DNA from: Macrostomum lignano
Lineage: Eukaryota
Direction of reading: 5' to 3'
Assembly: GCA_002269645.1 (NCBI GenBank)
Contig: NIVC01004954.1
Location: forward strand, 1 to 30,241
Length of the DNA stretch: 30,241 nt
In this document: in pieces, positions 1,254 to 28,645 of the stretch
How positions within the stretch are numbered: position 1 is the first letter of the stretch
Layout of the letters: every line of letters begins with the position of its first letter
Notes under the pieces: generated by a model
The model's input: the letters and a program-made list of their open reading frames with translations, nothing else
Told to the model about the DNA's origin: nothing
Databases searched by the model: none
Made by a program: the position numbers and the translations under genes

Positions 1254-1585
1254 CCTGTTAGACACACCTGTGATATGTTAGACACACCTGTGATATGTTA
1301 GACACACCTGTGATATGTTAGACACACCTGTGATATGTTAGACACACCTGTGATATCTTAGACACACCTGTGATATGTTAGACACACCTGTGATATGTTA
1401 GACACACCTGTGATATTTTAGACACACCTGTAACCTGTTAGACACACCTGAAACCTGTTAGACACACCTGTAACCTGTTAGACACACCTGTGATATGTTA
1501 GACACACCTGTAGTTATCTGTTAGACACACCTGCAACCTGTTAGACGCACCTGTAGTTATCTGTTAGACACACCTGTTAGACACA
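1254..1585. repeat. 20-bp tandem repeat (TGTTAGACACACCTGTGATA)n
   Basis: About 16 near-identical units directly visible, no spacers. Confidence 0.95.
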
Positions 1586-3344: not shown

Positions 3345-3890
3345 GTTTTTCCTAGAAACCTAACCATGAAAAAGTGATTTTCTTAGAAACTTAACCACGA
3401 AAAAGTGATTTTCTTAGAAATTATCCATGAAAAAGTGATTTTCTTAGAAACTTAACCATGAAAAAAGTGATTTTCCTAAAAACTTAACCATGAAAAAAGG
3501 GATTTTCCTAAAAACTTAACCATGAAAAAGTGATTTTCTTAGAAACTTAACCAAGAAAAAGTGATTTTCTTAGAAACTTAACCATTAAAAAGTGATTTTC
3601 TTAGTAGCTTAACCATGAAAAAGTGATTTTCCTAGAAACTTAACCATGAAAATGTGATTTTCTTAGAAACTTAACTATTAAAAAGTGATTTTCTTAGAAA
3701 CTTAACCATGAAAAAGTGATTTTCCTAGAAACTTAACCATGAAAAAGTGATTTTCTTAGAAACTTAACCATGAAAAAGTGATTTTCCTAGAAACTTAACC
3801 ATGAAAATGTTTTTTCTTAGAAACTTGACTATAAAAAAGTGATTTTCTTAGAAACTCAACTATGAAAACGTTATTTTCTTAGAAACCATG
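3345..3890. repeat. 31-bp tandem repeat (TTAGAAACTTAACCATGAAAAAGTGATTTTC)n
   Basis: About 17 units directly visible. Confidence 0.95.
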
Positions 3891-4307: not shown

Positions 4308-4371
4308 GTGAGCACCTTTCTTGATCAATATGTCAGCGTTTTCTAAAGTTCAATTTTTTTTAGGTTTGTGA

Positions 4372-4735
4372 GTCTTGGTGCTTTGTGAGGCTTGGTGCTT
4401 TGTGAGGCTTAATGCTTTGTGAGGCTTAATGCTTTGTGAGGCTTGGTGCTTTGTGAGGCTTAATGCTTTGTGAGGCTTAATGCTTTGTGAGGCTTAATGC
4501 TTTGTGAGGCTTGGTGCTTTGTGAGGCTTGGTGCTTTGTGAGGCTTAATGCTTTGTGAGGTGAGGCTTGGTGCTTTGTGAGGCTTAATGCTTTGTGAGGC
4601 TTAATGCTTTGTGAGGCTTAATGCTTTGTGAGGCTTAATGCTTTGTGAGGCTTAATGCTTTGTCGGGCTGGCGCTTGTGAGGTTTGGCACTTGGTGAGGC
4701 TGGCGCTTGTGAGGCTTGGCACTTTGTGAGGCTCT
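4372..4735. repeat. 17-bp tandem repeat (GCTTTGTGAGGCTTAAT/GGT)n
   Basis: Directly visible; two interleaved unit variants, degenerating at the 3' end. Confidence 0.95.
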
Positions 4736-5820: not shown

Positions 5821-6310
5821 CTTTCGGCGCCAAAATGAGTGCCTGCGGCGCCAAAATGAGTGCCTGCGGCGCTAAAATGAGTACTGCGGCGCCAAAATGA
5901 GTGCCTGCGGCGCTAAAATGAGTGCCTGCGGCGCTAAAATGAGTGCCTGCGGCGCCAAAATGAGTGCCTGCAGCGCTAAAATGAGTGCCTGCGGCGCTAA
6001 AATGAGTGCCTGCGGCGCTAAAATGAGTGCCTGTGGCGCCAAAATGAGTGCCTGCGGCGCTAAAATGAGTTCCTGTTGCGCTAAAATGAGTGCCTGCGGC
6101 GCTAAAATGAGTGCCTGCGGCGCTAAAATGAGTGCCTGCGGCGCTAAAATGAGTGCCTGCGGCGCTAAAATGAGTGCCTGCGGCGCTAAAATGAGTGCCT
6201 GTGGCGCCAAAATGAGTGCCTGCGGCGCTAAAATGAGTTCCTTTTGCGCTAAAATGAGTGCCTGCGGCGCTAAAATGAATGCCTGCGTCGCTAAAATGAA
6301 TGCGTAAATG
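5821..6310. repeat. 21-bp tandem repeat (GCGGCGCTAAAATGAGTGCCT)n
   Basis: Directly visible; source of the MSACGAK / APQALIL ORFs. Confidence 0.95.
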
Positions 6311-7803: not shown

Positions 7804-7844
7804 GTGCGAATTCATTAGCAAAATGTGTCCCCCTGAATCCAATC

Positions 7845-8445
7845 TGCAATTCCTAGAATCGAATCCCCAATTCCTAGAATCGAATCCCCAATTCCTAGAA
7901 TCGAATCCCCAATTCCTAGAATCGAATCGCCAATTCCTAGAATCGAATCCCCAATTCCTAGAATCGAATCCCCAATTCCTAGAATCGAATCCCCAATTCC
8001 TAGAATCGATTCGCCAATTTCTAGAATCAAATCCCCAATTCCTAGAATCGAATCCCCAATTCCTAGAATCGAATCGCCAATTCCTAGAATCGAATCCCCA
8101 ATTCCTAGAATCGAATCCCCAATTCCTAGAATCGATTCGCCAATTCCTAGAATCGAATCCCCAATTCCTAGAATCGAATCCCCAATTCCTAGAATCGAAT
8201 CCCTACTTCCTAGAATCGAATCCCCAATTCCTAGAATCGAATTCCCAATTCCTAGAATCGAATCCCCAATTCCTAGAATCGAATTCATCCCGATTCCTAG
8301 AATCGAATCCCCAATTCCTAGAATCGAATTTATCCCCGATTCCTAGAATCGAAATTATCCCCGATTCCTAGAATCGAATCCCTTATTCCTAGAAACGAAT
8401 CTTTAATTTCTAGAATGGAATCCACGATTCCTAGAATTGAAAGTA
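7845..8445. repeat. 21-bp tandem repeat (TTCCTAGAATCGAATCCCCAA)n
   Basis: Directly visible; source of the FLESNPQ / ILGIGDS ORFs. Confidence 0.95.
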
Positions 8446-9014: not shown

Positions 9015-9690
9015 GCCTGTCATCGCCCCCTATGGCGCCCCCTCAGCGCCCTCTTTGGCGCACCCTCAGCACCCCTATGGCACCCCCTCAGCGCCCTCCA
9101 CGGCTCACCCCAGCACATCTATGGCGCCCCCTCAGTGCCCTTTATGGCGCACCCTCAGCACCCCTAAAGCACCTCTTCAGCACCCTCTATGGCGCCCCCC
9201 ACAGCACCCCTATGGCGCCCCCCACAGCACCGTATGACACCCCCCACAGCACCCCTGTGGCACCCCCCACAGCACCCCTGTGGCACCCCCACAGCGCCCT
9301 CTATGGCGCACCCCACAGCACCCCTATAGCACCTCTTCAGCACCCTCTATGGCGCCCCCCCACAGCACCCCTATGGCGCCCCCCACAGCACCGTATGGCA
9401 CCCCCCACAGCACCCCTGTGGCACCCCCACAGCACCCCTATGACACCCCCCACAGCATCCCTGTGGCACCCACAGCACCCCTATGGCACCCCCACAGCAC
9501 CCCTATGGCACCCCCACAGCACCCCTATGGCACCCCCACAGCACCCCTATGGCACCCCCACAGCACCCCTATGGCACCCCCACAGCACCCCTATGGCACC
9601 CCCTCAGCGCCCTCTATGGCGCACCCCACAACACCCCTATAGAACCTCTTCAGCACCCCTATGGCGCCACACCTTCAGCGCCCCTATGAC
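9015..9690. repeat. C-rich ~21-23-bp tandem repeat (CAGCACCCCTATGGCACCCCCA)n
   Basis: Directly visible; source of the Pro/His-rich ORFs at 9032-9760. Confidence 0.9.
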
Positions 9691-10866: not shown

Positions 10867-13640
10867 GGCATCGCTCTCTAACAGTATCTGTCTCCCAGAA
10901 GCGCCCCGGCCCCCTGGCCTGGTCTCTAAGTTTGGGCGCCATCGTCTCCCTCTCTCAGTAGGTATTTCCACGCGATGCCTTGTAGTTGGCTGAAACTGCA
11001 TACAAGGAAGGTACAGTACGTGGGATACATGGCCATTTTACTGTTATTCATATCGAGCTTTCGTGGTGAATTTTTCCCTTTCGTTTGGGCGGGCGCAATT
11101 TACGGAAAATTGCATGGTATTGTACATCGGGGCTTGCAGGAAACTATATTAGGCAATAATGGGGCGCAATTTATGGGATGCATTGTTTTGACGGATGAGG
11201 GTTATCCTGCTTGAAAAAGGTAAAAGAAATATTGTACGTCGGCTCCAATGTAGCCATTGTGAGAGCTTCTCACGGGCCGGGCCGTATAAATTAGTTATGT
11301 AAATTCAAAATAAATAATGGCAAAAAATTAGTTATACAAGACTATCAAAAATATCATGCTACATATAATTTTACCCTATTAATTTTGTACCGCATGGCTT
11401 TCCTAGTCTTCTTGGCAAAATTGCTTGTAACATTTGTTCAAATTCGTAAAGTTAAATTGCATTGACAAAAAATTTACGCATTTTTAAAAGATGTTCTCCC
11501 TCAAGCCCGCTCCATAAACTGGCACTGAGAGGCAGGAGAGCGTGATCACTAGGCCTAACCTTAGTACAGCCTACTTCGTCTACTTAAACAACTGTGTATC
11601 TGTGGAAAAAAGTTTTTCTGCCTTGTTTGGCTTCGCTTCCCTTTTAATTGTAACTCCCCACCACCTAGCCCTATGATCTATGTCTAAATCTGTTTTTTTT
11701 ATTTTAGTCTAGCCTAGCCTAGCTTGCCTTAGGCCTACTTTGTCTATGCTCGGCCTGCCCATAGCTAATTTCCTAGACCTGCCTGGCCCTTAGCAAAGAA
11801 GAGCAATGCTTTGTCTTTAGTATAGGGCCTACTTCTAACAGAGGCATGGAGTTCCCATGGACACTGCTAGGGCTAGTATACCGCAAGCCGGCACTAGCCC
11901 TAATCTATATCAGATCAGATTGAAATGTTAAATGTAAGTATCCTAGGCTAGGCAGCCTAGCAAACATCCTTTGACTACGGGCCTATGACTACATGTCTTA
12001 AGAGTTATAGGGCAAATGGTTTAAGCTGCAGTAAAGTTAAAGTAGGCCTAAGTGAGCTGGCTAGGCCTAGTTCTTGTTGTAGTATTAGGTGAGGCCTAAC
12101 TCTAAACTAGGGCTAGGCCTAGTTTCAATTTTAAATGTACTAGGGGCCTACTAGGGTTAGGGTACATGACTAAGACTGCCACAGCTATTACTGGCTACTG
12201 GTATTGAGAAGAGCTACCAATCTTCTAGGCGCTAGCATTGCTATTCCTCTCCTAGACCTAGGTTCCTCTTTTGCAGCCTTGTCTTACTGGCTCTCCTACC
12301 TACTCATTAACTCATCTCTTTAGCACTATCCAATAATATATTGTGCCAAATTCCTCCCTTAGCTCCTCAAGTGTGGCCATCTTGGTATGTGGTAGTCTTG
12401 GTCTTATAAGTTATACCATGTTATAAGGGCCTATCTTAGTACTAGAAATAGCCTAGTAACCTACCTAGGCAAACTGGACTTAGTATTTAGGCCTAATATA
12501 TAATCTTGTGATTTTTTACTACTTTAGCCTAACTTTCAATTATATGTAGCTTTTTAAAATTATATTTATCCCTATTGGAATAGAATTAGCAAAGCCTGTA
12601 AACGCTGCATTGAGCATTACGAAAGATAGGCTCTACTTCAAGTTCAAAGGGTGAAAGTAGTTGTTATTTGTCTAGTGACTAGACAAATAACCTTTTGCTA
12701 TTTCGGTTTTTTGTTAAAGACAAGATGCAAAATCGCACCTTAGGCTTTACTCATTTTCAATATGCAATTTTAGGGCTCAAAGTGCAATTTCTCTTTTTCT
12801 TATTTTAAAGCAGTGCAAATAAGGTTTTAATAGAAAAATAATAGGTTGAGACCACAGTTACGTTTCAATTTCAGGGTGCAATTTTTTGATTTAAGGTGCA
12901 TACATTCTATGCACAAAAATAAACCTAGTTGCTATTTGTCTAGTTAAATTGCTAACATGAATATCTATTTGTTTAGTGATAAATATTCTAGATTTTTAAG
13001 ACCTTTTCTAGTATCCTGATTAATATTTTGTTATACTAGTGCAAGCAAAGCAGATATATGTAATGCATATATGCAATTTGGCATAATTTGGTATACAAGT
13101 AAAAGTCTTTAAAATCTTGGAATATTCACCCTTGGAGTTTCTATAAAATAGAATATCAATTTAACTAGACAAATAACAAAATGCCTATTTGTCCAGTATT
13201 AACTAGATGAATAAAGAAAGATGGCTATTATCCAGTAACCAGACAAATAGGCCCTAACCACATTGCTATTTGTCTGGTCACCAAACAAATAACAATTGCC
13301 AAGGGTGAAAACCTACAGATGTGTGCTTGAAAATAGTGTCAATTTATTATATAATATATTGCACTGTACACCTTTAGCATTATTAAATGATGTTCCAAAA
13401 GAGCATTTTTTGTCATAAATCAAAATTTGCTAATTTTTAAAAGCTCAAATTTTTGACTTTTTATTGTATATAATTAAAAAATCTCATTCCTATCTTATTA
13501 CTTGTATTAGTCTCTATTGCAAACCAAAATTAACTAAATTTTGAATAAAAAGCTTAAGGAAACTCATTTTAGGCAAATTTGTAGCTACTTAAAGTACCAA
13601 TGTAAGATAAGATGCAACAGTCATGATTGCAAAATAAAAA

Positions 13641-13958
13641 TATCAGAGTATTATGATGATAGTATTAATCCATTCTCTGACCAAGTTTATGTGTAAAGAC
13701 TGGCTTATCATCTATTATATAAGTCTTGTCTTTTGCACTAAGTTGGTGTGCGCGCCACCTTGGAAGGCTTCTCTATTTGTGCTGCTAATTTATTGTCACT
13801 TGGATATCTGGCAACCTATTCTAGCATTACAGGTTGTTAGTTTTCTGTCCTTTTTAAACAGAAACACCTGTTTTGTATGCCTGATAATCCAATATGACTG
13901 CATGCATACTTGGAGATTGCTGTCAAGATGTTAAATTTGGATCTGAATGACTCTGATA
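13641..13958 (+). ncRNA. SNORD17: Long box C/D snoRNA, SNORD17-like, copy a (28S Um at human U3818/3797, yeast 2314 equivalent)
   Basis: Box C ATGATGA 13653-13659; guide TTAATCCATTC + D' CTGA 13677-13680 complementary to 28S GAAUGGAUUAA; box D CTGA 13943-13946; 9-bp terminal stem TATCAGAGT/ACTCTGATA (coordinates include stem); ~250-nt structured insert between D' and C'. Confidence 0.8.
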
Positions 13959-14073
13959 AACTTGATAGTATCTGTAAATTTTCATATTGCAGTTGTATTA
14001 AACAATATTATCAAACTAATTATCAAAAATGCTTGTTTAATTATCAAAAAACCCAGCCTATTTGAATGTATAA

Positions 14074-14138
14074 ATGATGCTACCCAACGTGTTTTGAGTC
14101 ACAATGACTATGAATTAATAAAAAGAAACGATAACTGA
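14074..14138 (+). ncRNA. Candidate box C/D snoRNA with variant box C, 18S 5'-domain-complementary D guide
   Basis: ATGATGC 14074-14080, D' TTGA 14094-14097, C'-like ATGACTA, box D CTGA 14135-14138; AAAGAAACGATAA resembles the antisense of 18S UUAUCGUUUAUUU (yeast form, 1 mismatch). No clear terminal stem. Confidence 0.5.
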
Positions 14139-14338
14139 TCAATTACTTTTGTGTGCTTATTTACAACTTACTTAATCAATATTTGCACTATGTCCCTCTA
14201 AATATCGTTCTTTGTTTACACACATTTGCAGACTTGCTGTTTTTCCCCTTGTCACGAGCAATTAACAAAAGCAAATCTGCTTCTGAAAATGTAAGTTCTG
14301 AAACATCTGGTACTTTAACAATTTGCTTTTTTAATTTA

Positions 14339-14409
14339 ATGATGAATACTTGACAAGCATATGTCGGAATGCACTCTTGTGCTTTCTGTAGATACTATTT
14401 TCATTCTGA
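14339..14409 (+). ncRNA. SNORD27: Box C/D snoRNA, SNORD27/snR74 equivalent (18S Am27/28)
   Basis: Box C 14339-14345; guide GACAAGCATATG + D' CGGA complementary to 18S CAUAUGCUUGUC, D+5 = A of CAUAmUGC; box D 14406-14409. Confidence 0.9.
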
Positions 14410-14579
14410 ATTTTAAATTTATTCAATCAACTTTTAGGCATTGGCGCTGTCTCATGTATGGCATTGGCGAATTTTATTTCAATCAACTTTTGCAAATTTC
14501 AGGAGCTGGCATACAAAAATCGCCTACAAAGTCTTACAACATTTATTCGGTGAGTTTTTCTTCGAAGCTGTGAAACAGT

Positions 14580-14968
14580 TGTCAGAGAAACGATGATGAA
14601 TGCTTTAATCCATTCTCTGACTGAGCTTTTCAAATGTGCTTGAATAGTTATAAAAGGTCTTCCAAATTGGGGTTTTTTTGCCTCTATTTGTTAACCTTTT
14701 CTTTCAGGCACAAATTTGATTTGCTGGTGTGCGCGCCAGCTGGCTTGAACAGGCTCTCTTAGTGAAGTGCTGACTATTATTGTCACTTTAGGGTTTGCTT
14801 CAAGGGTGCTCGCTAAATACCTTTTTATAGTCGAAGACTGATTATTTATTATACCGCCTTTGACTTGTTAGTGAGCACTATAGAAGCGTGACCCGAAAAG
14901 CGAGTGCTTGCACTTCTTTTTTGCAGAGCCGTTTGGATGTAAATTATGGTTCTGAGCGTTCTCTGACA
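14580..14968 (+). ncRNA. SNORD17: Long box C/D snoRNA, SNORD17-like, copy b
   Basis: Box C 14593-14599; same guide TTAATCCATTC + D' CTGA 14617-14620; box D 14952-14955; 10-bp stem TGTCAGAGAA/TTCTCTGACA (included); ~310-nt insert sharing motifs with copy a. Confidence 0.8.
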
Positions 14969-15021
14969 GCGATTATTAGTATATGGTTAGTTTTTATAGC
15001 TTAATTAACGCACCAGTTTGT

Positions 15022-15102
15022 CATCCACAAATGATGATCAATTTTACACCGTCATGCTGTTTGATTCGCCTGATAATAAAACTATAGCAGCTGATGTGGA
15101 TG
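15022..15102 (+). ncRNA. Box C/D snoRNA, four-copy family with guide TACACCGTCATGCTGT, copy 1
   Basis: Box C 15031-15037, D' TTGA, box D 15091-15094, 8-bp stem CATCCACA/TGTGGATG (included). Confidence 0.85.
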
Positions 15103-15224
15103 CTATCAATGTCCTTATGACACTATTTAAAATCTAGAATATCGATTTTAAGTTTTATATCAGATTCAGAATCCTTAGAGATAAGGTTAGGTTGTGGCTT
15201 GGTTTAAAAAACTGGCTGTCAAAA

Positions 15225-15292
15225 ATGATGATAATTATTCACAACTGTTTGTTTTGAGTTAACATGACAATTTCACATGCATCACCATCTGA
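15225..15292 (+). ncRNA. SNORD33: Box C/D snoRNA, SNORD33/snR55 equivalent (18S Um1326), copy 1
   Basis: Box C 15225-15231; D guide CATGCATCACCA pairs 18S UGGUGGUGCAUG (one G-U); box D 15289-15292; D+5 = UGGUmGG. Confidence 0.88.
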
Positions 15293-15538
15293 TGTAGTTT
15301 ATTGAGTACATTTTAATGAACATGTAAGCTATGCTTGCCATTTTATAAAAAGTACAACCTGTCGCCCAAAAACTCTACTTTCATAGGTACTGGTAGTAGA
15401 TTATTAACAAGTTCTCAAGTCTGCCGGTCCAGTGTTTCATTTTCTAAATTTAAGGTAATTATTGGTTTTGACTATATTTTGCTTTTTGTGATCATACATA
15501 AACATAGCCTGAAATTTTCATTTAAGCATGTACGTCGC

Positions 15539-15635
15539 TTGTATTCACCAAAAATGATGACCAATTTTTATACACCGTCATGCTGTTTGACACACTTTTG
15601 ATAATTAAAAACAATGGCAGCTGAGGTGAATACAA
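15539..15635 (+). ncRNA. Box C/D snoRNA, four-copy family, copy 2
   Basis: Box C 15554-15560, guide TACACCGTCATGCTGT + TTGA, box D 15621-15624, 11-bp stem TTGTATTCACC/GGTGAATACAA (included). Confidence 0.85.
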
Positions 15636-15823
15636 TAGGCATTTCCCTTAACACCTTTGCTGCTCATCATCATTCAGAATCATCGTTTATCTTCATTTTG
15701 CTAACGAAAGTCTTTGTTCTTAAATCGATCTTCTAATTAAAAGCAGTCTGAAAAATCCGAAGCAAATAGTTCTCTTTAGTACGAGTAGAAGTCAGTAGCA
15801 AGCAAGCAACGTGTCCTCAGAAA

Positions 15824-15911
15824 TGTAATATGATGTTTGTTATCCCTGGCTTAGTTCAATAAGCTCTATGTAGTAAATACTTTATGCCAACTTCAATGGC
15901 TGCTGATTACA
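15824..15911 (+). ncRNA. SNORD1: Box C/D snoRNA, SNORD1/snR38 equivalent (28S Gm4392, yeast Gm2815)
   Basis: Variant box C ATGATGT 15830-15836; guide GTTATCCCTG + D' CTTA complementary to 28S CAGGGAUAAC, D+5 = CAGGmG; box D 15903-15906; stem TGTAAT/ATTACA. Confidence 0.82.
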
Positions 15912-16038
15912 GTTCTGTATACATACGATGATACGACACTTGCTGCTTTTTTGGTATTCAATTTTTAATTAGGACAATATATACTTTTTTTACTAATACT
16001 TAGGACTAGGTCTATTAACTGCAACTTGGGCGTTTTCA

Positions 16039-16119
16039 ATGATGATTGGAATTACCGTCGGAAGTTGGTGTACCAATTTGTGTACGCTGGCGATTCTTTG
16101 AAGAAAATTTGCTGTCTGA
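16039..16119 (+). ncRNA. SNORD65: Box C/D snoRNA, SNORD65/snR77 equivalent (18S Um627/578), with a U24-like D element
   Basis: Box C 16039-16045; guide TGGAATTACCG + D' CGGA complementary to 18S CGGUAAUUCCA; box D 16116-16119 preceded by GAAAATTTGCTG; stem GGGC/GCCC. Confidence 0.88.
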
Positions 16120-16188
16120 GCCCTTGATTTGCCATTTTTATGCCTATATACTACAGTGTAGATAGTCTTGCGTATAAGCCTACTTTTT

Positions 16189-16262
16189 ATGATGATAAAT
16201 ACGTTTGCTTACCTTATCTGTGATCTCTTAAAGGGACGTGATAAGACACTACAGCGCTCTGA
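16189..16262 (+). ncRNA. SNORD48: Box C/D snoRNA, SNORD48 equivalent (28S Cm1881/1868), copy 1
   Basis: Box C 16189-16195; D guide CTACAGCGCT pairs 28S GGCGCUGUGG-type sequence (after GAACU) with G-U pairs, D+5 = GGCGCm; box D 16259-16262. Confidence 0.78.
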
Positions 16263-16455
16263 TGTATATATATTGATCAGAAGTGTTTTTATATTGTAGA
16301 ATATTTTATAAATTTCTCTAACAATGCCACTTTCTCTTAATTACTACAGGTCTAAGCTGTCCTGGGGCCTTTTAAAATCAATATAAAAGTAAGTGAATTC
16401 AAAACCAATAACCAACTCAATTTTTGTAGTAATAAGCTCTACTATTATGTTTTTA

Positions 16456-16521
16456 ATGATGACTATTTCCTTACCTACTATGATTTATTACTAATGTGAA
16501 TGCAATATTTCCCGAATCTGA
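16456..16521 (+). ncRNA. Box C/D snoRNA predicted to guide 28S GUAGmGUAAGGG, copy 1
   Basis: Box C 16456-16462; guide TTCCTTACCTAC + D' ATGA complementary to 28S GUAGGUAAGGGA; box D 16518-16521 preceded by TTTCCCGAA. Confidence 0.85.
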
Positions 16522-16710
16522 AATGCTAGTCTAAATTACATATATGTAAGCTTAAATTTTTAGAAGTAAATCAAAAAATAAATTTTGTCACTAATTATTT
16601 TCAGATTTAGCGATCCAGTGTGACTCTGATCTAAATTTAAGGTAAGCTTCAATTCACTTTTTTTCATATTACTTGGGTTTATGTATAATCTTTGTTACAA
16701 GCAATAGATT

Positions 16711-16799
16711 GGCTTCATTCATGATGACTCAGATTTTACACCGTCATGTTGTATGATCTCGCATGAGTTTAGTTCTATTTGTCTCTGAGTTTTAAAGCC
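16711..16799 (+). ncRNA. Box C/D snoRNA, four-copy family, copy 3 (divergent 3' half)
   Basis: Box C 16721-16727, guide TACACCGTCATGTTGT + ATGA, box D 16785-16788, stem GGCTT/AAGCC (included). Confidence 0.8.
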
Positions 16800-17775
16800 T
16801 TTATTAATACCTTACAAACTCTTTAAAACCCCCGGATTTTAAACCCACCGTATTCCCATCCCCGGAACTCTTTATTGCATACATCCTTAAATTTAAAGTC
16901 ATACTGAAACAAAAACTTTAAAGTTAGAATAGAGGTTTGATGAATGTAGTAAATTCGTGTTAAATAAAGATTTAAGACAAGCATTGATTGATCTGACTAA
17001 GCGATGAGATGAGAGATTAATGAGCGGCACAAACACCAGAAAAAGCAGACAAACTTCACATGCTTACAGTTATTGTCCTGATTGAGTTACAGAGTTGAGA
17101 CTTGATATCGAGACAGAAAATAAGTCTAAAGAATGGTAGGGTGGCAAGTCAATAGAATTTCAGGTAGGGTGGCAGGTCAATAGAATTTCAGGTAGGTTAG
17201 CAGGTCAATAGAAAAAAGACATTAATCAAATTCTAATACTAATCAAACCCGAGCAGCACGAGGCAAGACATTATCGTGATGGTGAACCTGACTTCTCTAA
17301 GCCACCCGCCATCCGGACGCCAACCCAACCAGTTTGAGACCGCCAGATGTTGGAGGAGGGAATGAGCGACTGATCGTTCGGCAACAAATTTCATGCTAGC
17401 GTTAAGCAAAGTTACGGCAGCCAAACGATTGGGGTGGTTGCTACGCTGACAAAAAGCAGACTAACTTTAAAAGTGCACAGCTCCGTACAGGATTGACTTT
17501 ATGACTCGAAATTTTTACACGCTTGTGTCGAAATAGTTAGAGATTGTTTGTGTCAAATTTGAGTAGGTTTGATAAAGGTGGAGCGCCGCTATAGAGGATT
17601 AAGTAAAAAAATCCCGCTTTCTTAGCAGCAACTTTTTGCACTTTGAGGTGGGAATACTGGGAAGACGCTCTCCGTAGTGAGGTTAGGGTGGGTGCAAAAC
17701 GGTGTCATTTGGTTGAGCGGTTTGAGAGTCCATAGCGAACAAAATTGGCCACAGACACACAGTTTACAGATTTTA
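16800..17775. mobile_element. Probable interspersed-repeat insertion in a host-gene intron
   Basis: ~1 kb of higher-GC, snoRNA-free sequence in an otherwise compact region, with an internal 28-bp triplication (17135-17213). No TIR or TSD found; ends approximate. Confidence 0.35.
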
Positions 17776-17782
17776 GGTATAA

Positions 17783-17854
17783 ATGATGATAGAATATTGA
17801 CACCTCTTGTCTGATATTTACTAAGTAAATGCGGAGTTTATTAGCTCTATCTGA
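17783..17854 (+). ncRNA. SNORD44: Dual-guide box C/D snoRNA: D = SNORD44 equivalent (18S Am166), D' = 28S G equivalent to yeast Gm2791; copy 1
   Basis: Box C 17783-17789; TGACACCTCTTG + D' CTGA pairs 28S CA(A/G)GAGGUGUCA; TATTAGCTCTA + box D 17851-17854 pairs 18S UAGAGCUAAUA. Confidence 0.88.
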
Positions 17855-18037
17855 TCAAGTATCAAGCTCTTTTGTCCTAATAGAAATCGTTAAGAATCGA
17901 TGCAAGTTTTCATATTCACTTATTTCATTTTAGAGGACGCTAAAATCCAGCTGGAAAATTGTAAGCCTTCTTAACAGTGCTTCAGGTCAGTTAGCAATGC
18001 TTAAGTATTTTTCCCCACCCTTATTTTACTTTTTACA

Positions 18038-20136: not shown

Positions 20137-20496
20137 CGTCTAGATAAAGCTGGTATTTTAGCTCCTATTCGAGGCCTAAGTGTTTTGCTTAACGTATCTT
20201 CCTTATTTTATGTTGGTGCCTCCCAGGGTTTTTTTTTGTGCGCAGAGTGTGCGTATGCACCCTAAATTTTAAAATCGCACCCTGAAATTAAAAAAGTAGG
20301 TGCGGTTTAGGTGCGGTCTTATAACCATTTTTCTTTAAAGGCTTAACCATGCTTAAGCTATTTTTTATGCACTGCCTTAAAATATGAAACAAAATAACTC
20401 TTTAATTCCTATTAAGTCATATAGGCAATATAGCCTATAGCTATAGCCTTATGTAAGATATTAAAATATACATTCCCAGTTGTCTGAACTGTGAGC

Positions 20497-22983
20497 AATG
20501 TGAGGGTTTCACGAGAGATATTCAGACAAAGGCTCCCTAAAACACGCCCCACACCGGGCCCCGAACTGCTACACATTATAACATTTTTTGTCAATGCAGT
20601 ATTTGATTGCAAGGAAAAGTTAAAATAGTAATGGAATAAATATCTTTATTTATTTTTTTAAATATTATTATTTTTATATTCTCGTTTTCATTATTAAATT
20701 ATAATATTATTATTTTATTAATATTATTATTAATATCACTTATTGTTCACCGAATTTTATATTTCAAAGTAAAAAAACTAAATTTAATAAAAACTTGAAG
20801 CTTAACAGAAAATGCATTCTGAAGTGTCTTTAGTTATAGTCCAATTTGTTTTAATGTGTAGCGCTGCAGGGCGGTGCGGGGCGTGTTTTAGGGAGACCCA
20901 TTCAGACAGACATTCAAAATGATTGTCTGTAACTTCAAACAAAATTGACCCGCTTCAACCATCTTTTTGGCAAATACTTACGCAAGTGTTGGGCGTCGAA
21001 TAAGCTTTAATTTATTAACTGAAGTAAAAATCCTTCTGACATACATTGATTTAAAAATTGCTTAGCAACACTAGCTCTGATTAGAAATCGCTTTACTGTT
21101 GACTAAAATTGTTTTGATCGTAGCAGCCTAAAAGCAGATACTGGATTTAAAAATGCTTCGATTTACTCTATACGCATGTCTCAGCTTTAAAATGACACCT
21201 CAGGCGTCGCAAAAGACAGCTTTGATGCTGAGATATTCGACACTAAACATGCATTGCTTTGCGCAATCTCACATTCAGAAATTTCACTGATTTTTTGTCG
21301 ATATTTGTGCAGTTGCCATGTCCTTGTTTTTCATCAGAATCTTGTCAAATTCTAGTCATGTCTATACGCATGTCTCAGCTTTAAAATGACACCTCAGGCA
21401 TTGCAAAAGACAGCTTTGATGCTGAGATATTCGACACTAAACATTGCTTTGCTCAAACTCACATTCGGAAACTTCACTGATTTTTATTCAATATTTGTTC
21501 AGATGCTTGTCTACTTCTCCATTTATTAACCATCGCATGGAGCCTTGCTAACGTACAAGTGTATGTAGTTACAGTAAATGGGGTTTTTGTGACTCACTTA
21601 AACTTGTTTACGCATTCTGCAGCTATTCGCCGCCTTTCATTGGAGTGATTCATGGAGTCCAGTTGATAAATTTCCACAAATTGGACTGCTTCTACGTCAG
21701 ATCTCAACATTTGGAACCGTCCTTGAACTATTTCAGAGTTAAGTGAGCTAATGGCATCAAATGGAAGGCTAGTGCTCGTACTTGTAAGCGAAGCAGGTTC
21801 ACAATTGAAATGGTTATATTCATGGCCATGGGATCTAAACTGATCTGTTTTACTTTCACGATCGCTTTGGTCTCAGAAGGAGCAGCAGTTGATGGACTGA
21901 GGTGAGAAGAAGATGTGTCACGACTTGAGCTGTTTATAGAAAATATCTTTATCCAATTAAATATTTTCATGCGGCTCCTTAGGTTGTTCCGAATTCCGAG
22001 TCTAGAAGTCAAGACAGAAAAAAAGTTAAGAACTGCTACTGTAGTCCGTAGGGATTGGAAAGCTTAGCAGTACATTAGAAATCGCCAGTTCAATCTAAAA
22101 AGTTTGAAGTACATATAGCTATTGGGTTGCAACAACAGTAGAAAAAATTCTTCCTTTTTATTTTATTCCCACCGCTTACCTCATTCCGATTTGGATAGCA
22201 GAATTGCCACGCAAAAAAAGTAAAAACATAACAATAAACTATTTGCTTCATATTAATTGCCACTGACTGTTAATAAACGCGACGTCAATTTCTCTCAATA
22301 ACAGTTGGAACATGTTTCTCGTACACTCGTATATTTATTTGAACCGCAAAGCGGTGAAAAAGTCATGATTGGTTGCCATATGTACAAATGTACACTCACA
22401 GACTCACTGACTCAGGTACAATCTATGCAATATAAAGGCAGGAATCATTAAAAATCAAATACTTAAGACAGTTTAAGAGAAGTCCAGGTTTAAACTGGAC
22501 ATGACTAAAATTTGACAAGTTTCTGATGAAAAACAAGGACACGGCAACTGCACAAATATCGACAAAAAATCAGTGAAATTTCTGAATGTGAGATTGCGCA
22601 AAGCAATGCATGTTTAGTGTCAAATATCTCAGCATCAAAGCTGTCTTTTGCGATGCCTGAGGTGTCATTTTAAAGCTGAGACATGCGTATAGAGTAAATC
22701 GAAGCATTTTTAAATCCAGTATCTGCTTTTAGGCTGCTACAATCAAAACAATTTTAGTCAACAGTAAAGCAATTTCTAATCAGAGCTAGTGTTGCTAAGC
22801 AATTTTTAAATCAATGTATGTCAGAAGGATTTTTACTTCAGTTAATAAATTAAAGCTTATTCGACGCCCAACACTTGCGTAAGTATTTGCCAAAAAGATG
22901 GTTGAAGCGGGTCAATTTTGTTTAAAGTTACAGACGATCGTTTCGAATGTCTGTCTGAATATCTCTCGTGAAACCCTCACATT
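20497..22983. mobile_element. Foldback-like element with ~490-bp terminal inverted repeats
   Basis: AATGTGAGGGTTTCACGAGAGATATTCAGACA (20497-20528) plus 20909-21362 is the near-perfect reverse complement of 22498-22983; partial tandem duplication of the left arm at ~21363-21490. Confidence 0.85.
20529..20899. mobile_element. 371-bp MITE with 9-bp TSD (Mutator-like) inserted in the left arm of the foldback element
   Basis: TSD ATTCAGACA at 20520-20528 and 20900-20908; inverted CTCCCTAAAACACGCCC / GGGCGTGTTTTAGGGAG near the ends; very AT-rich core. Confidence 0.8.
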
Positions 22984-23228
22984 CTAAACAAGACTCAAGA
23001 GAAATTGCACTCTGAGCCTTAAAATCGCACCTTGAAATTTGGCACAAGGTGCGATTTCGCACCTTATCTCTGGCGAAAAAAAAAACCCAGGACTGCCTCC
23101 CTAAAATCCTCAGATTATGTGACGCACCTAATGCTGCATGATTCAGTTTACTTGTAAGTGACTGCCAATATGCTCGTAATATAATTAAATAAATATATAA
23201 TTTGTATACTCGTACCAGAAACTAACTA

Positions 23229-25040: not shown

Positions 25041-25074
25041 TTGCGCCCAAGCATGGTAGTAGTGTTAAAGACGC

Positions 25075-25360
25075 AGGTTTAGGGTAGCAGTGTAAAGGGA
25101 GGCAGGTGTAGGGTAGCAGCGTGAAGGAAGGCAGGTGTAGGTAGCAGTGTGAAGGGAGGCAGGTGTAGGTAGCAGCGTGAAGGGAGGCAGGTGTAGGTAG
25201 CAGTGTGAAGGGAGGCAGGTGTAGGTAGCAGTGTGAAGGGAAGCAGGTGTAGGTAGCAGCGTGAAGGGAGGCAGGTGTTGGTAGCAGCGTGAAGGGAAGC
25301 AGGTGTAGGTAGCAGCGTGAAGGGAGGTGTAGGTAGTAGTGTGGAGGGAGGCAGGTGTAA
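25075..25360. repeat. 28-bp purine-rich tandem repeat (GTAGGTAGCAGTGTGAAGGGAGGCAGGT)n
   Basis: About 9-10 units directly visible. Confidence 0.92.
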
Positions 25361-25461
25361 GTAACAGCTTTAAGAGCTACGAACTTACTACTTTCGTTTC
25401 TACCTATATTCAGTCTTGCTTGATAATAATTTAAACAAATCACTACAACTTTCCCACAGCC

Positions 25462-26010
25462 ATGTTTCGCAAATTCGACGACAAAGAGAACATCTCGTCC
25501 GTAAACAACGCCAAGAACAGTGTCCAGAAGGGTATCAGAAACACCATTCTGACGCAGTATCCGGGATGCGCAGATTACGTTGACCAGATTCTACCCAAGA
25601 AGGAGACGCTCAGCGTTGTCAAATGCCACGAGCACATCGAGCTGTACGCCAACCCGGCTGGCGAGGTGCTGTTCTTCAGGCAGCGCGACTCGCCGCTGTA
25701 TCCCAGCTTGAAACTGCTGCACAGATATCCGTTCATGCTGCCGCACATGCAGGCGGACAAGGGCGCTATCAAATTCCTGCTGAACGGGTCCAATGTGATG
25801 TGCCCGGGCCTGACCACGCCTGGCGGCCGGCTGTCCCAGGTGCCAGCTAGCACAGTTGTTGCCGTCATGGCCGAAGGCAAACAGCACGCGTTAGCAATCG
25901 GCTTGACGGCGATGAGCGCGGACGAGATTGCCAGCAAGAACAAAGGAGTTGGCATCGAGACTGTGCACTGTTTAAATGACGGCCTGTGGCGGCTGCGTTC
26001 TGTCAAGTAG
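25462..26010 (+). CDS. MCTS1: Malignant T-cell-amplified sequence 1 homolog (pre-PUA + PUA domain; translation recycling/reinitiation factor, DENR partner)
   Basis: Single 182-aa ORF with hallmark MFxKFDxKEN start, CHEHIE, LFFRQR, YPxLxLLHxYP, DKGAIKFxLxGxNxMCPGLT, AEGKQHAL and HxLNDGLW motifs; intronless. Confidence 0.97.
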   Translation: MFRKFDDKENISSVNNAKNSVQKGIRNTILTQYPGCADYVDQILPKKETLSVVKCHEHIELYANPAGEVLFFRQRDSPLYPSLKLLHRYPFMLPHMQADKGAIKFLLNGSNVMCPGLTTPGGRLSQVPASTVVAVMAEGKQHALAIGLTAMSADEIASKNKGVGIETVHCLNDGLWRLRSVK

Positions 26011-27620: not shown

Positions 27621-27651
<31 letters not shown>

Positions 27652-27925
27652 ACAGGGACTGAGACTGGGACTGGGACTGGGGACAGAGACTGGGACAGGG
27701 ACAGGGACTGGGGCTGGGACGGGACTGGGACAGGGACTGGGACAGGGACTGGGACTGGGACTGGGACTGGGGACAGAGACTGGGACAGGGACTAGGACAG
27801 GGACAGGGACTGGGACAGGGACATGGACTGGGACTGGGACTGGGGACAGAGACTGGGACAGGGACTAGGACAGGGACAGGGACAGGGACTGGGACAGGGA
27901 CATGGACTGGGACTGGGACAGGGAC
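27620..27925. repeat. Hexamer microsatellite (GGGACT/GGGACA)n
   Basis: Directly visible. Confidence 0.95.
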
Positions 27926-28161: not shown

Positions 28162-28454
28162 GTGAGTCCTGGCTGCATTGGTGTTGCTGGGAAGTGTCCC
28201 TGTCGGTCTCACATTGTCTGCTGTGTGTGAGCAATCAGACACTCACTGCACGAATGGAATTTGAAAAGAACATTATGATTGTAATAACAAATATGATCTT
28301 ATTTTTTCTTTAATCTGATTAGCTTTGTTCATTTCTCATAATGCTTCTGACATAGTGACAATTAGTATAGTCGTTTTTATGGCAAGTTTGAGCACAAAAG
28401 TCTAGATAATATGGAATTGAAGGCTTTTAAAATGTGAGTCATGGATGAATTGGC

Positions 28455-28645
28455 GGTGAATAGTGGGTGAATCATGGATTAATCAGGGGTGAATAGTGGG
28501 TGAATCATGAATGAATCAGGGGGTGAATAGTGGGGTGAATCATGGATTAATCAGGGGGTGAATAGTGGGTGAATCATGGATTAATCAGGGGGTGAATAGT
28601 GGGTGAATCATGGATTAATCAGGGAGTCAGTGGTGGGTGAATCAA
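28455..28645. repeat. ~31-33-bp tandem repeat (GTGAATAGTGGGTGAATCATGGATTAATCAGGGG)n
   Basis: About 5-6 units directly visible. Confidence 0.92.

What the first reader, a model, noticed from the sequence alone, without database searches (positions are those of the whole stretch)
13641..14968. Two 300-390 nt SNORD17-like RNAs whose conserved internal motifs could extend pairing along the same 28S segment
Seen: both have box C, guide TTAATCCATTC, D', a 250-310 nt hairpin-rich insert, then C'/D and a 9-10 bp closing stem. The inserts are otherwise divergent yet share TGGTGTGCGCGCCA (13744-13757; 14725-14738) and TTATTGTCACTT (13790-13801; 14777-14788). Inference: conserved 28S reads AGUGACGCGCAU-GAAUGGAUUAA; the guide pairs GAAUGGAUUAA, GTGCGCG can pair CGCGCAU and TGTCACT can pair AGUGACG, in the collinear antiparallel order expected of a three-segment clamp upstream of the methylated U, a site that is both pseudouridylated and methylated in human. 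Alternatives: TTTATTGTCACT matches 18S AGUGACAAUAAA (yeast form), or the G-U-rich mini-hairpin is a Cajal-body-type signal as in long C/D scaRNAs.
Basis: partly seen in the sequence, partly recalled or inferred. Interest (0 to 1): 0.82.

Follow-up and report, generated by a model that had tools for sequence, protein, structure and literature searches.

The report
Two long flatworm SNORD17-type snoRNAs
These are two neighbouring, unusually long copies of a known kind of small nucleolar RNA that marks one uridine of the large ribosomal RNA for methylation; they are new, extra-long members of an old family, and the idea that their shared inner motifs grip more of the ribosomal RNA is possible but not supported.

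Summary
RNA1 (13641-13958) and RNA2 (14581-14967) are intron-encoded box C/D snoRNAs in a multi-snoRNA host gene of the flatworm Macrostomum lignano. Their D' guide UUAAUCCAUUC places the U of LSU GAAU*GGAUUAA at the methylation position, the site guided by vertebrate SNORD17 and by C. elegans sn2417.

They are new, unusually long members of that guide family. C-to-D length is 293 and 362 nt, against 95-262 nt in 16 homologues recovered from metagenomes. Two further genomic copies of the locus vary about 4-fold less inside RNA1, and about 2-fold less inside RNA2, than in the surrounding intron.

The "three-segment clamp" is not supported:
- Motif 1 is a self-contained hairpin (UGGUG-UGCG-CGCCA).
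- The two proposed 28S contacts overlap by 2 nt.
- The complementarity is no better than shuffled controls (p = 0.065 and 0.14; family-wide 0.12-0.16).
- Neither motif occurs in the other homologues.

Extra pairing beside a guide is in any case a known mechanism (van Nues 2011).

A different internal motif, AGGUUCUCUU, is conserved across the family and lies between the two flagged motifs.

The parts
13641..13958 (+). RNA1: long box C/D snoRNA, stem to stem, 318 nt
   Evidence: Sequence. Fold z = -5.4. 3 variant sites in 319 nt among three genomic copies, against 4.2% in flanking intron (p = 0.0012).
13641..13649 (+). RNA1 5' strand of the terminal stem (UAUCAGAGU)
   Evidence: Perfect 9-bp complement of 13950-13958.
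13653..13659 (+). RNA1 box C (AUGAUGA)
13665..13675 (+). RNA1 D' guide UUAAUCCAUUC. The A five nt upstream of D' pairs with the U of LSU GAAU*GG.
   Evidence: rRNA sequence confirmed.
13677..13680 (+). RNA1 box D' (CUGA)
13744..13757 (+). RNA1 motif 1: hairpin UGGUG-UGCG-CGCCA
   Evidence: Pair probabilities 0.75-1.0 with the loop unpaired. Invariant in three genomic copies.
13766..13774 (+). RNA1 GGCUUCUCU, a local version of the family-wide AGGUUCUCUU motif
13779..13784 (+). RNA1 GUGCUG block, predicted to pair long-range with GCAU(G)CA at 13901-13907
13790..13801 (+). RNA1 motif 2 UUAUUGUCACUU
   Evidence: UUAUU is unpaired. GUCA is paired long-range in the predicted ensemble.
13926..13931 (+). 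RNA1 C'-like box (AGAUGU), 11 nt upstream of box D
   Evidence: Aligned with UGGAUGU of RNA2, L007 and L017, all with the same 11-nt spacing.
13943..13946 (+). RNA1 box D (CUGA)
13950..13958 (+). RNA1 3' strand of the terminal stem (ACUCUGAUA)
14581..14967 (+). RNA2: long box C/D snoRNA, stem to stem, 387 nt
   Evidence: Sequence. Fold z = -7.9. 9 variant sites in 388 nt (p = 0.05), and none in 14675-14818.
14581..14592 (+). RNA2 5' strand of the terminal stem (GUCAGAGAAACG)
   Evidence: 11 bp with 14957-14967; A14590 is bulged.
14593..14599 (+). RNA2 box C (AUGAUGA)
14605..14615 (+). RNA2 D' guide UUAAUCCAUUC
14617..14620 (+). RNA2 box D' (CUGA)
14725..14738 (+). RNA2 motif 1 hairpin, extended by GC/GC to 7 bp (-10.3 kcal/mol)
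14751..14760 (+). RNA2 AGGCUCUCUU, matching the family-wide motif at 9 of 10 positions
14767..14772 (+). RNA2 GUGCUG block. GUGC pairs long-range with GCAC at 14910-14913.
14777..14788 (+). RNA2 motif 2 UUAUUGUCACUU
   Evidence: UUAUU is unpaired. GUCA pairs locally with UGAC at 14771-14774.
14935..14940 (+). RNA2 C'-like box (GGAUGU), 11 nt upstream of box D
14952..14955 (+). RNA2 box D (CUGA)
14956..14967 (+). RNA2 3' strand of the terminal stem (GCGUUCUCUGAC)

Best explanation
RNA1 and RNA2 are two old tandem paralogues of an intron-encoded box C/D methylation-guide snoRNA in the flatworm Macrostomum lignano. They belong to the guide family of vertebrate SNORD17 (HBI-43) and C. elegans sn2417.

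Shown:
- Canonical box C, box D and a long terminal stem.
- An 11-nt D' guide that puts the U of LSU GAAU*GGAUUAA five nt upstream of D'.
- A C'-like GAUGU box a fixed 11 nt upstream of D.
- One snoRNA per intron in a host gene that carries about ten other C/D snoRNAs.
- Reduced variation over the whole of RNA1, including its insert.

Inferred. Each RNA assembles with the core C/D proteins, and fibrillarin methylates that U. The 245-314-nt D'-C' spacer folds into a structured domain that brings D' and C' together. The conserved ~60-nt core (hairpin A, GGCUCUCU, GUGCUG, motif 2) is mainly a structural or protein-binding part of that domain. Motif 1 is kept as a hairpin. GGCUCUCU and GUGCUG form the 5' strand of a long-range helix that closes next to C'. 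Any contribution of the GUGCGCG heptamer as an accessory guide to the adjacent 28S CGCGCAU is a secondary possibility, not shown.
For: - Anatomy and coordinates.
- Rfam gives only weak local hits, all through C box, guide and D': sn2417 24.5 and 18.2 bits, SNORD17 13.3 and 10.7 bits. The SNORD17 consensus shows the same architecture and target.
- Mouse Snord17 is 238 nt, and knockout plus rescue show it methylates the equivalent 28S U. The human target is given as U3797.
- A C-box, guide and D' pattern scan found about 16 distinct eukaryotic homologues, in RPL10 introns, RPS3A introns and a kinetoplastid snoRNA cluster. Their C-to-D lengths are 95-262 nt, so the family is generally long.
- The organism is M. 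lignano, and two further genomic copies cover both RNAs.
- Variant density is 0.9% in RNA1 and 2.3% in RNA2, against 4.2% in flanking intron. There are no variants in the guide, M1, M3 or M2.
- 5 of 6 variants at predicted paired positions keep pairing.
- Hairpin A has pair probability 0.75-1.0 in both RNAs.
- The GUGC:GCAY long-range pairing is seen in both RNAs.
Against: - There are no expression data, so the mature ends and lengths are inferred.
- Neither RNA reaches the Rfam gathering score.
- The insert of RNA2 is not significantly constrained (p = 0.19), and it contains a strong polypyrimidine-AG at 14916-14927.
- The isolated core does not fold better than shuffles.
- The predicted partner of motif 2's GUCA differs between the two RNAs, so structure alone does not explain motif 2.
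- Only two paralogues and near-identical copies were available, so covariation support is thin.
Confidence: 0.8

Rival explanations
1. Accessory-guide clamp. After the D' guide binds GAAUGGAUUAA, GUGCGCG in motif 1 pairs with the adjacent CGCGCAU, and UGUCACU in motif 2 pairs with AGUGACG. Together they tile 23 contiguous nt of 28S and stabilise a short, AU-rich 11-bp guide duplex. This would be extra base-pairing of the kind described by van Nues et al. 2011.
For: - The complementarity exists and is collinear (rRNA sequence).
- The best RNAduplex site on the 5' flank is motif 1 in both RNAs (p = 0.013 and 0.126).
- RNA1 cofolded with a 48-nt 28S fragment uses the guide plus GUGCGCG, CAC, UUGGA and AGGC.
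- The guide duplex is only -11.9 kcal/mol, and snoRNAs with short guides tend to carry extra pairing.
- The vertebrate SNORD17 consensus has GUGCGC directly after D'. L017 has UGUGCGU 5 nt after D' (p = 0.017-0.057).
Against: - Contiguous pairing is not above shuffles (p = 0.065 and 0.14; family Fisher 0.12-0.16).
- The two contacts overlap by 2 nt on the rRNA.
- Motif 1 is locked in a hairpin. In RNA2 the hairpin is as stable as the duplex, and cofolding gives no intermolecular pairs.
- The stem bases UGGU and CCA are conserved but are not needed for 28S pairing.
- UUAUU of motif 2 is not explained by 28S pairing.
- The motifs are absent from 16 homologues.
Confidence: 0.2
2. The motifs pair with 18S rather than 28S. 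UGCGCGCC of motif 1 is an 8-nt perfect complement of the universal 18S GGCGCGCA. Motif 2 is complementary to 18S AGUGAC(A/G)A(U/A)AA about 30 nt downstream: 11-13 nt with the fungal and plant form, 8 contiguous plus more with the usual bilaterian form. That would make these RNAs dual 28S/18S binders.
For: Sequence inspection only. The 18S sequences come from my memory and are not verified here. This reading covers more of motif 2, including UUAUU, than the 28S reading does.
Against: - The order is not antiparallel-collinear: the 5' motif pairs with the 5' rRNA element.
- No D'-like box follows motif 2, so it cannot act as a methylation guide.
- An 8-mer match somewhere in about 6 kb of GC-rich rRNA is expected by chance.
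- Motif 1 is in a hairpin.
Confidence: 0.07
3. Hairpin A is a Cajal-body localisation signal, and the RNAs are scaRNA-like.
For: The RNAs are long C/D RNAs with an internal G/U-containing hairpin. There is a very weak SCARNA7 hit (7.9 bits, E = 7).
Against: The defined vertebrate element is an apical stem made mostly of consecutive G.U/U.G pairs from at least 4-6 UG repeats. Hairpin A has four Watson-Crick pairs and one wobble. The guide targets rRNA, not an snRNA.
Confidence: 0.03
4. The shared 12-14-mers are leftovers of duplication or patchy gene conversion and have no function. RNA2 may be a decaying copy.
For: RNA2 varies about 2.5 times more than RNA1 among the genomic copies, and its insert is not significantly constrained. 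Neither motif is conserved outside this species.
Against: The inserts are otherwise unalignable and differ in length (245 against 314 nt), so the duplication is old. Conversion tracts of 12-14 nt are implausibly short. The core segments 13696-13908 and 14675-14818 carry no variant among three copies, while flanking intron carries 4.2%.
Confidence: 0.1

Closest known systems
SNORD17 (HBI-43 / MBI-43; Rfam RF00567), vertebrates
   Same: A box C/D snoRNA with a D' guide (consensus ..UUUAUCCAUUCGCUGA) to the same LSU uridine. It is unusually long (237-238 nt) with a structured D'-C' insert, and it is intron-encoded. Its methylation function is verified in mouse.
   Different: The host gene is SNX5 in vertebrates, against a multi-snoRNA, apparently non-coding host here. 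The inserts share no detectable sequence. Rfam scores are 13.3 and 10.7 bits against a gathering score of 45. The RNAs here are 80-150 nt longer and are present as two divergent tandem paralogues.
sn2417 (Rfam RF01222), C. elegans
   Same: The same C box, guide and D' (..CUAAUCCAUUCUCUGA). It gives the best Rfam score of any family (24.5 bits, local E = 0.005).
   Different: It is 123 nt long. The score is far below the gathering score of 80, and only the 5' 40 nt align.
C/D snoRNAs with 'extra base-pairing' (yeast snR70, snR75, snR76, snR87 / human U16; van Nues et al. 2011, PMC3116282)
   Same: The proposed mechanism is the same in concept. A conserved element downstream of D' pairs with the rRNA immediately upstream of the guide target, sometimes overlapping it by 1-2 nt, and can sit in an internal stem-loop.
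   Different: There the elements are phylogenetically conserved and tested by mutation. Here the complementarity is not above chance, lies 63-104 nt from D' and is buried in a hairpin stem. SNORD17 is not among the snoRNAs they list.
Long intronic box C/D scaRNAs (U90/SCARNA7, mgU2-47)
   Same: They are long C/D RNAs with an internal apical hairpin.
   Different: Their localisation element is a G.U/U.G wobble stem from UG repeats, which is absent here. Their targets are snRNAs.

Membership tests
Box C/D methylation-guide snoRNA | Box C (RUGAUGA) near the 5' end and box D (CUGA) near the 3' end, brought together by a terminal stem | tested here: met
   AUGAUGA and CUGA are flanked by a 9-bp stem (RNA1) and an 11-bp stem (RNA2).
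Box C/D methylation-guide snoRNA | An antisense element of at least 10 nt ending next to D or D', with the target nucleotide opposite the 5th position | tested here: met
   UUAAUCCAUUC-U-CUGA is an 11-nt complement of LSU GAAUGGAUUAA, and the 5th position lies opposite the U (rRNA sequence).
Box C/D methylation-guide snoRNA | An internal C' box at guide-length distance from box D | tested here: met
   AGAUGU and GGAUGU lie 11 nt upstream of D. UGGAUGU has the same spacing in L007a, L007b and L017. The box is degenerate.
Box C/D methylation-guide snoRNA | A stable RNA bound by fibrillarin, Nop56, Nop58 and Snu13, with the target actually methylated | not testable with these tools
   No expression or modification data were available.
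SNORD17 / sn2417 guide family | A guide to the U of LSU GAAUGGAU(U/G)AA | tested here: met
   This is the same target as the Rfam SNORD17 and sn2417 consensus guides.
SNORD17 / sn2417 guide family | A score at or above the Rfam gathering threshold | tested here: not met
   SNORD17 scores 13.3 and 10.7 bits against 45. sn2417 scores 18.2 and 24.5 bits against 80.
SNORD17 / sn2417 guide family | An unusually long D'-C' spacer | tested here: met
   The spacers are 245 and 314 nt. Homologues have C-to-D lengths of 95-262 nt, and mouse Snord17 is 238 nt.
SNORD17 / sn2417 guide family | Shared internal sequence with other members | tested here: inconclusive
   M1 and M2 are absent elsewhere. AGGUUCUCUU is shared with many metagenome homologues (win2 9/10; win1 with one extra base). 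Its presence in vertebrate SNORD17 is not established.
C/D snoRNA with extra base-pairing (van Nues 2011) | A conserved element complementary to the rRNA next to the guide target | tested here: inconclusive
   7-bp complements exist and are conserved between the two paralogues. They are not above shuffles (p = 0.065 and 0.14) and are not conserved in the family.
C/D snoRNA with extra base-pairing (van Nues 2011) | The element is accessible, in a loop or single strand | tested here: not met
   Only the UGCG tetraloop of motif 1 is unpaired, and the stem has pair probability 0.75-1.0. GUCA of motif 2 is paired in both ensembles.
Box C/D scaRNA | A G.U/U.G wobble stem from at least 4-6 UG repeats | tested here: not met
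   Hairpin A has one wobble pair among five pairs.
C/D-H/ACA composite RNA | Hairpin-H box-hairpin-ACA, with a pseudouridylation pocket matching a target | tested here: not met
   The ceN104 hit is only 16.8 bits (E = 2). AUAGAA is at 14880-14885, but there is no ACA box, and by inspection the pocket strands do not match the LSU site.

The most novel reading that the evidence does not exclude
The conserved ~60-nt core of these super-long SNORD17-type snoRNAs may be an rRNA-docking module. Motif 1 and motif 2 would extend the guide duplex over the 12 nt immediately upstream. The family-wide AGGUUCUCUU motif between them would pair with LSU CAAGGGAAC, which I place about 40 nt downstream of the guide site (that distance is from my memory). 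The snoRNP would then clamp three or four separate rRNA segments and act as a folding chaperone as well as a methylation guide.
Probability: 0.12. Interest if true: 0.55.

Novelty: new member of a known kind. Interest (0 to 1): 0.3.

Why it matters
The locus adds flatworm members, and about 16 unannotated environmental members, to the SNORD17/sn2417 guide family. The family and its long internal spacer turn out to be widespread: the guide also occurs in a kinetoplastid snoRNA cluster. The Rfam models for the family miss all of these.

The locus gives a natural experiment. Two ancient paralogues have kept only the boxes, the guide and a ~60-nt core, which points to the bases worth mutating. If the core or the family-wide AGGUUCUCUU motif proved to bind rRNA, it would explain why this one methylation guide is long in so many lineages. 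As it stands the finding is ordinary snoRNA annotation with an untested accessory-pairing idea.

Tried and rejected
- Rfam at gathering thresholds gave no hit.
- H/ACA composite reading of RNA2's central hairpin. There is a weak ceN104 hit, an AUAGAA 15 nt after the upper stem, and two variants (14833 and 14834) that keep the upper stem paired. There is no ACA box, and the pocket does not match the LSU site. Rejected.
- miRNA-like hairpin in RNA1 (mir-1537, 19.9 bits against a gathering score of 63). Rejected as chance.
- D-box guide. The 11 nt upstream of box D differ between the paralogues at positions that wobble pairing cannot compensate, and they vary across homologues. No shared target, so it is an orphan spacer.
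- The idea that the pre-D region mimics the target and pairs with the guide. It holds for some homologues but not all, so I dropped it.
- Repeat or transposon origin of the inserts. There are no other copies in the window or in the loci.
- Local hairpin for motif 2. It is weak (-0.5 and -3.9 kcal/mol), so structure does not clearly explain motif 2.
- Looking up the chance 93-aa ORF over RNA1 to find transcript assemblies. Not on record.
- Literature searches for sn2417 and HBI-43 gave nothing on internal motifs.
- I could not obtain M. lignano rRNA or any closer flatworm homologue.
Full report
**Observation.** The region was read directly and every coordinate in the finding is exact.

RNA1 runs from 13641 to 13958.
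- Terminal stem: UAUCAGAGU (13641-13649) pairs with ACUCUGAUA (13950-13958), 9 bp.
- Box C AUGAUGA: 13653-13659.
- Antisense element UUAAUCCAUUC: 13665-13675.
- D' CUGA: 13677-13680.
- C'-like AGAUGU: 13926-13931.
- Box D CUGA: 13943-13946.

RNA2 runs from 14581 to 14967.
- Terminal stem: 14581-14592 pairs with 14957-14967, 11 bp with one bulged A.
- Box C: 14593-14599.
- The same antisense element: 14605-14615.
- D': 14617-14620.
- C'-like GGAUGU: 14935-14940.
- Box D: 14952-14955.

The D'-C' inserts are 245 and 314 nt. BLAST of each RNA against the whole window finds only three shared exact words: the 17-mer guide plus D', the 14-mer TGGTGTGCGCGCCA and the 12-mer TTATTGTCACTT. MAFFT shows that the last two lie in a ~60-nt core that also shares CUUG, GGCU(U)CUCU and GUGCUG. 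Both RNAs fold much better than dinucleotide shuffles (z = -5.4 and -7.9).

**Context and organism.** The stretch from 13.6 to 17.9 kb is a multi-snoRNA host gene. It has short exon-like segments bounded by GT..AG and one C/D snoRNA per intron. Weak but sensible Rfam matches are:
- SNORD27-like at 14334-14412.
- SNORD34-like at 15023-15101 and 15543-15631, with a third copy by eye near 16710-16790.
- SNORD33/32-like at 15218-15298 (36 bits).
- snoR38-like at 15822-15913.
- Others near 16033, 16190, 16451 and 17780.

An intronless MCTS1 gene lies at 25462-26010. Its best named relatives are molluscs and flatworms at about 66% identity. Looking that protein up returned two contigs of assembly GCA_002269645.1. 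Several papers give that accession for the neopolyploid flatworm Macrostomum lignano. Both contigs differ from the window (mostly 96-99% identity, less in repeat-rich segments). Both lack window 20225-23093, so the fetched loci reach far enough upstream to include both RNAs.

**Identity.** No Rfam family reaches its gathering score. At permissive thresholds the only relevant hits are C. elegans sn2417 (24.5 and 18.2 bits) and vertebrate SNORD17 (13.3 and 10.7 bits). Both align through box C, the guide and D' only.
- The printed SNORD17 consensus (GUGAAAUGAUGAUCCAGUUUAUCCAUUCGCUGA...CUGAUCAC, 238 positions) has the same layout and the same target.
- The LSU sequence AGUGACGCGCAUGAAUGGAUU, with G instead of the final U in vertebrates, is confirmed by sequences printed in two papers.
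- The A five nt upstream of D' pairs with the U of GAAU*GG.
- Mouse Snord17 is 238 nt and lies in an SNX5 intron. Knockout and rescue show that it methylates the equivalent U, and a guide mutant fails to rescue. The human site is listed as 28S U3797.
- That this U is also pseudouridylated in human is my recollection and was not checked.

**The family is broad and generally long.** One scan of metagenome contigs with TGATGA-N4-9-TAATCCATTCNCTGA returned 41 loci. About 16 of them are distinct, plausible eukaryotic snoRNAs:
- two successive RPL10 introns (L007) and another RPL10 intron (L017);
- RPS3A introns (L003, L030, L037, L038);
- a group of AT-rich contigs, several from moss-associated samples (L002, L009, L010, L016, L020 and duplicates);
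- L013, L024 and L041;
- a tandemly repeated kinetoplastid snoRNA cluster (L006; trypanosomatid H/ACA families above gathering score).

With D boxes assigned by hand, C-to-D lengths are 95-262 nt, against 293 and 362 nt for the window RNAs. Extended terminal stems also recur: 8 bp in the L002 group, 10 bp in L017, and about 10 bp with a mismatch in L024.

**Constraint.** I compared the window with the two other genomic copies over 13400-17000.

| Region | Variant events | Length (nt) | Rate | p (fewer than flanks) |
|---|---|---|---|---|
| Sequence outside the nine listed snoRNAs (introns and short exons) | 96 | 2310 | 4.2% | - |
| RNA1 | 3 | 319 | 0.9% | 0.0012 |
| RNA1 insert only | 3 | 245 | 1.2% | 0.011 |
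| RNA2 | 9 | 388 | 2.3% | 0.05 |
| RNA2 insert only | 9 | 310 | 2.9% | 0.19 |

- No variant falls in the guide, motif 1, GGCUCUCU, GUGCUG or motif 2.
- There are no variants at all in 13696-13908 or in 14675-14818.
- The RNA2 variants cluster in segments that RNA1 lacks.
- Of six substitutions at positions paired in the MFE structures, five keep a canonical pair. These include the adjacent pair 14833 G>A and 14834 A>G, opposite U14861 and U14860.
- This supports full-length, structured RNAs. The support is strong for RNA1 and moderate for RNA2.

**Test of the clamp idea.** The proposed contacts exist on paper. GUGCGCG pairs with CGCGCAU at -10.5 kcal/mol, and UGUCACU pairs with AGUGACG at -7.9 kcal/mol. 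The guide duplex is -11.9 kcal/mol. Several results weigh against the idea.
- The two contacts share two rRNA bases.
- The best contiguous pairing of each insert to GUGACGCGCAU is not significantly better than in 400 dinucleotide shuffles: p = 0.065 and 0.14. One sequence per lineage across the family gives a Fisher p of 0.12.
- RNAduplex against the 18-nt flank gives p = 0.013 and 0.126 for the window RNAs, 0.017 for L017, and 0.19 combined.
- Motif 1 is predicted to be the hairpin UGGUG-UGCG-CGCCA, with pair probabilities of 0.75-1.0 in both RNAs.
- The hairpin is extended by different flanking pairs in the two copies: AAG..CUU around a U-C mismatch in RNA1, and GC..GC in RNA2.
- All 14 nt are conserved, although the 28S pairing would need only seven of them.
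- The extended hairpin is worth -6.1 kcal/mol in RNA1 and -10.3 kcal/mol in RNA2.
- RNA1 cofolded with a 48-nt 28S fragment does use the guide, GUGCGCG, CAC, UUGGA and AGGC (ddG -2.4). RNA2 forms no intermolecular pairs.
- Motif 2 has an unpaired UUAUU and a paired GUCA, but the partner differs: long-range in RNA1, local in RNA2. The local hairpin is weak. Motif 2 is therefore not well explained by structure, and 28S pairing would explain only its 3' half.
- Neither motif is detectable in the 16 other homologues (best p > 0.08). No close relative was available, so conservation within flatworms is untested.

The mechanism itself is established for other snoRNAs: extra pairing just upstream of the target, sometimes overlapping it, sometimes presented from an internal stem-loop (van Nues et al. 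2011). SNORD17 is not in their list. One hint remains. The vertebrate consensus carries GUGCGC immediately after D', and L017 carries UGUGCGU 5 nt after D'.

- Cajal-body signal: the defined vertebrate element is an apical stem made mostly of consecutive G.U/U.G pairs, needing at least 4-6 UG repeats. Hairpin A has one wobble pair, and the guide targets rRNA.
- 18S: from memory, motif 2 is complementary to 18S AGUGAC(A/G)A.. (11-13 nt with the fungal and plant form, 8 contiguous with the common bilaterian form). UGCGCGCC of motif 1 is complementary to the universal 18S GGCGCGCA about 30 nt upstream. However, the order is not antiparallel-collinear, no D'-like box follows, and the flatworm 18S was not available. 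This stays open at low probability.

AGGUUCUCUU is conserved in otherwise unalignable family members.
- 10/10 in four of the five L002-group sequences (9/10 in L020) and in both L007 copies.
- 9/10 in L017.
- 8/10 in L003, L013 and L030.
- 9/10 in RNA2 (AGGCUCUCUU, 14751-14760).
- With one extra base in RNA1 (GGCUUCUCU, 13766-13774).
- p <= 0.005-0.045 against shuffles for eight of the non-window members (the L002 group, L007a/b and L003) and for RNA2.

It sits between the two flagged motifs. In the window RNAs it is predicted to form the 5' strand of a long-range helix that closes near C' (UCUCUA:UGGAGA in RNA1; GGCUCU:AGAGCC is possible in RNA2). In the L002 group it is the loop and closing pairs of a hairpin whose stem covaries (AUCAAG/CUUGAU against UUAAG/CUUAA).

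Within about 100 nt of the target, its best common LSU complement is CAAGGGAAC. The mean duplex energy is -10.0 kcal/mol, lower than 98% of commonly permuted motifs. That segment is confirmed as LSU sequence by primer LR230. Its distance from the target is from my memory. The window copies pair less well there (6 bp). This is a lead, not a result.

**Verdict.** These are two new, exceptionally long paralogues of a known methylation-guide snoRNA family in a flatworm. The anatomy is confirmed. The clamp interpretation is possible but unsupported, and the hairpin nature of motif 1 partly argues against it. Novelty: new member of a known kind. Interest is modest.

Noticed in passing
window 13766-13774 and 14751-14760; L002, L009, L010, L016, L007 (two copies), L017, L003, L013, L030: An internal motif, AGGUUCUCUU, is conserved across otherwise unalignable SNORD17-type snoRNAs from very different eukaryotes. 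Its best common LSU complement is CAAGGGAAC (p about 0.017 against permuted motifs).
   Followed up: partly
window 14916-14927: A strong polypyrimidine tract plus CAG (CUUCUUUUUUGCAG) lies inside RNA2, just upstream of its C' box. It is a potential 3' splice site that would cut the snoRNA. A second CAG coincides with the end of the terminal stem (14967-14969).
   Followed up: no
window 14795-14905: RNA2's central domain looks like an H/ACA 5' hairpin. It has a lower stem GUGCUCGCU/AGUGAGCAC, an upper stem GUCGAAG/CUUUGAC, and AUAGAA 15 nt after the upper stem. There is a weak ceN104 hit (E = 2). There is no ACA box, and the pocket does not match the LSU site. Most RNA2 variants among the genomic copies fall in this domain.
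   Followed up: partly
window 13400-17900: A multi-snoRNA host gene with one C/D snoRNA per intron. It includes three SNORD34-like paralogues (15023-15101, 15543-15631, about 16710-16790), plus SNORD27-like, SNORD33/32-like and snoR38-like members. None reaches its Rfam gathering score.
   Followed up: partly
window 20225-23093: This 2.9-kb segment is absent from both other genomic copies of the locus (L042, L043). It is an insertion or deletion polymorphism between subgenomes or haplotypes, possibly a mobile element.
   Followed up: no
window 1256-1577, 3347-3886, 4365-4733, 5825-6303, 7835-8441, 9027-9665, 25055-25367, 27621-27925, 28434-28644: There are many minisatellite arrays (periods 6-45 nt, 6-50 copies). 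Several create long spurious ORFs.
   Followed up: no
window 25462-26010: An intronless MCTS1/Tma20 gene (PUA domain). It is at most about 66% identical to any other named species in the search. It is present in at least two further genomic copies, as expected for the neopolyploid M. lignano.
   Followed up: partly
L006 (whole locus): A tandemly repeated kinetoplastid snoRNA cluster (TB10Cs1H2 and TB11Cs4H3 above gathering score) contains a C/D snoRNA of roughly 155 nt (C box to an uncertain D box) with the same guide. The guide family therefore predates animals.
   Followed up: no
window 13744-13757 and 13790-13801 (and the RNA2 copies): From memory of 18S: UGCGCGCC of motif 1 complements the universal GGCGCGCA, and motif 2 complements AGUGAC(A/G)A.. 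about 30 nt downstream in 18S. The order is not collinear-antiparallel.
   Followed up: partly
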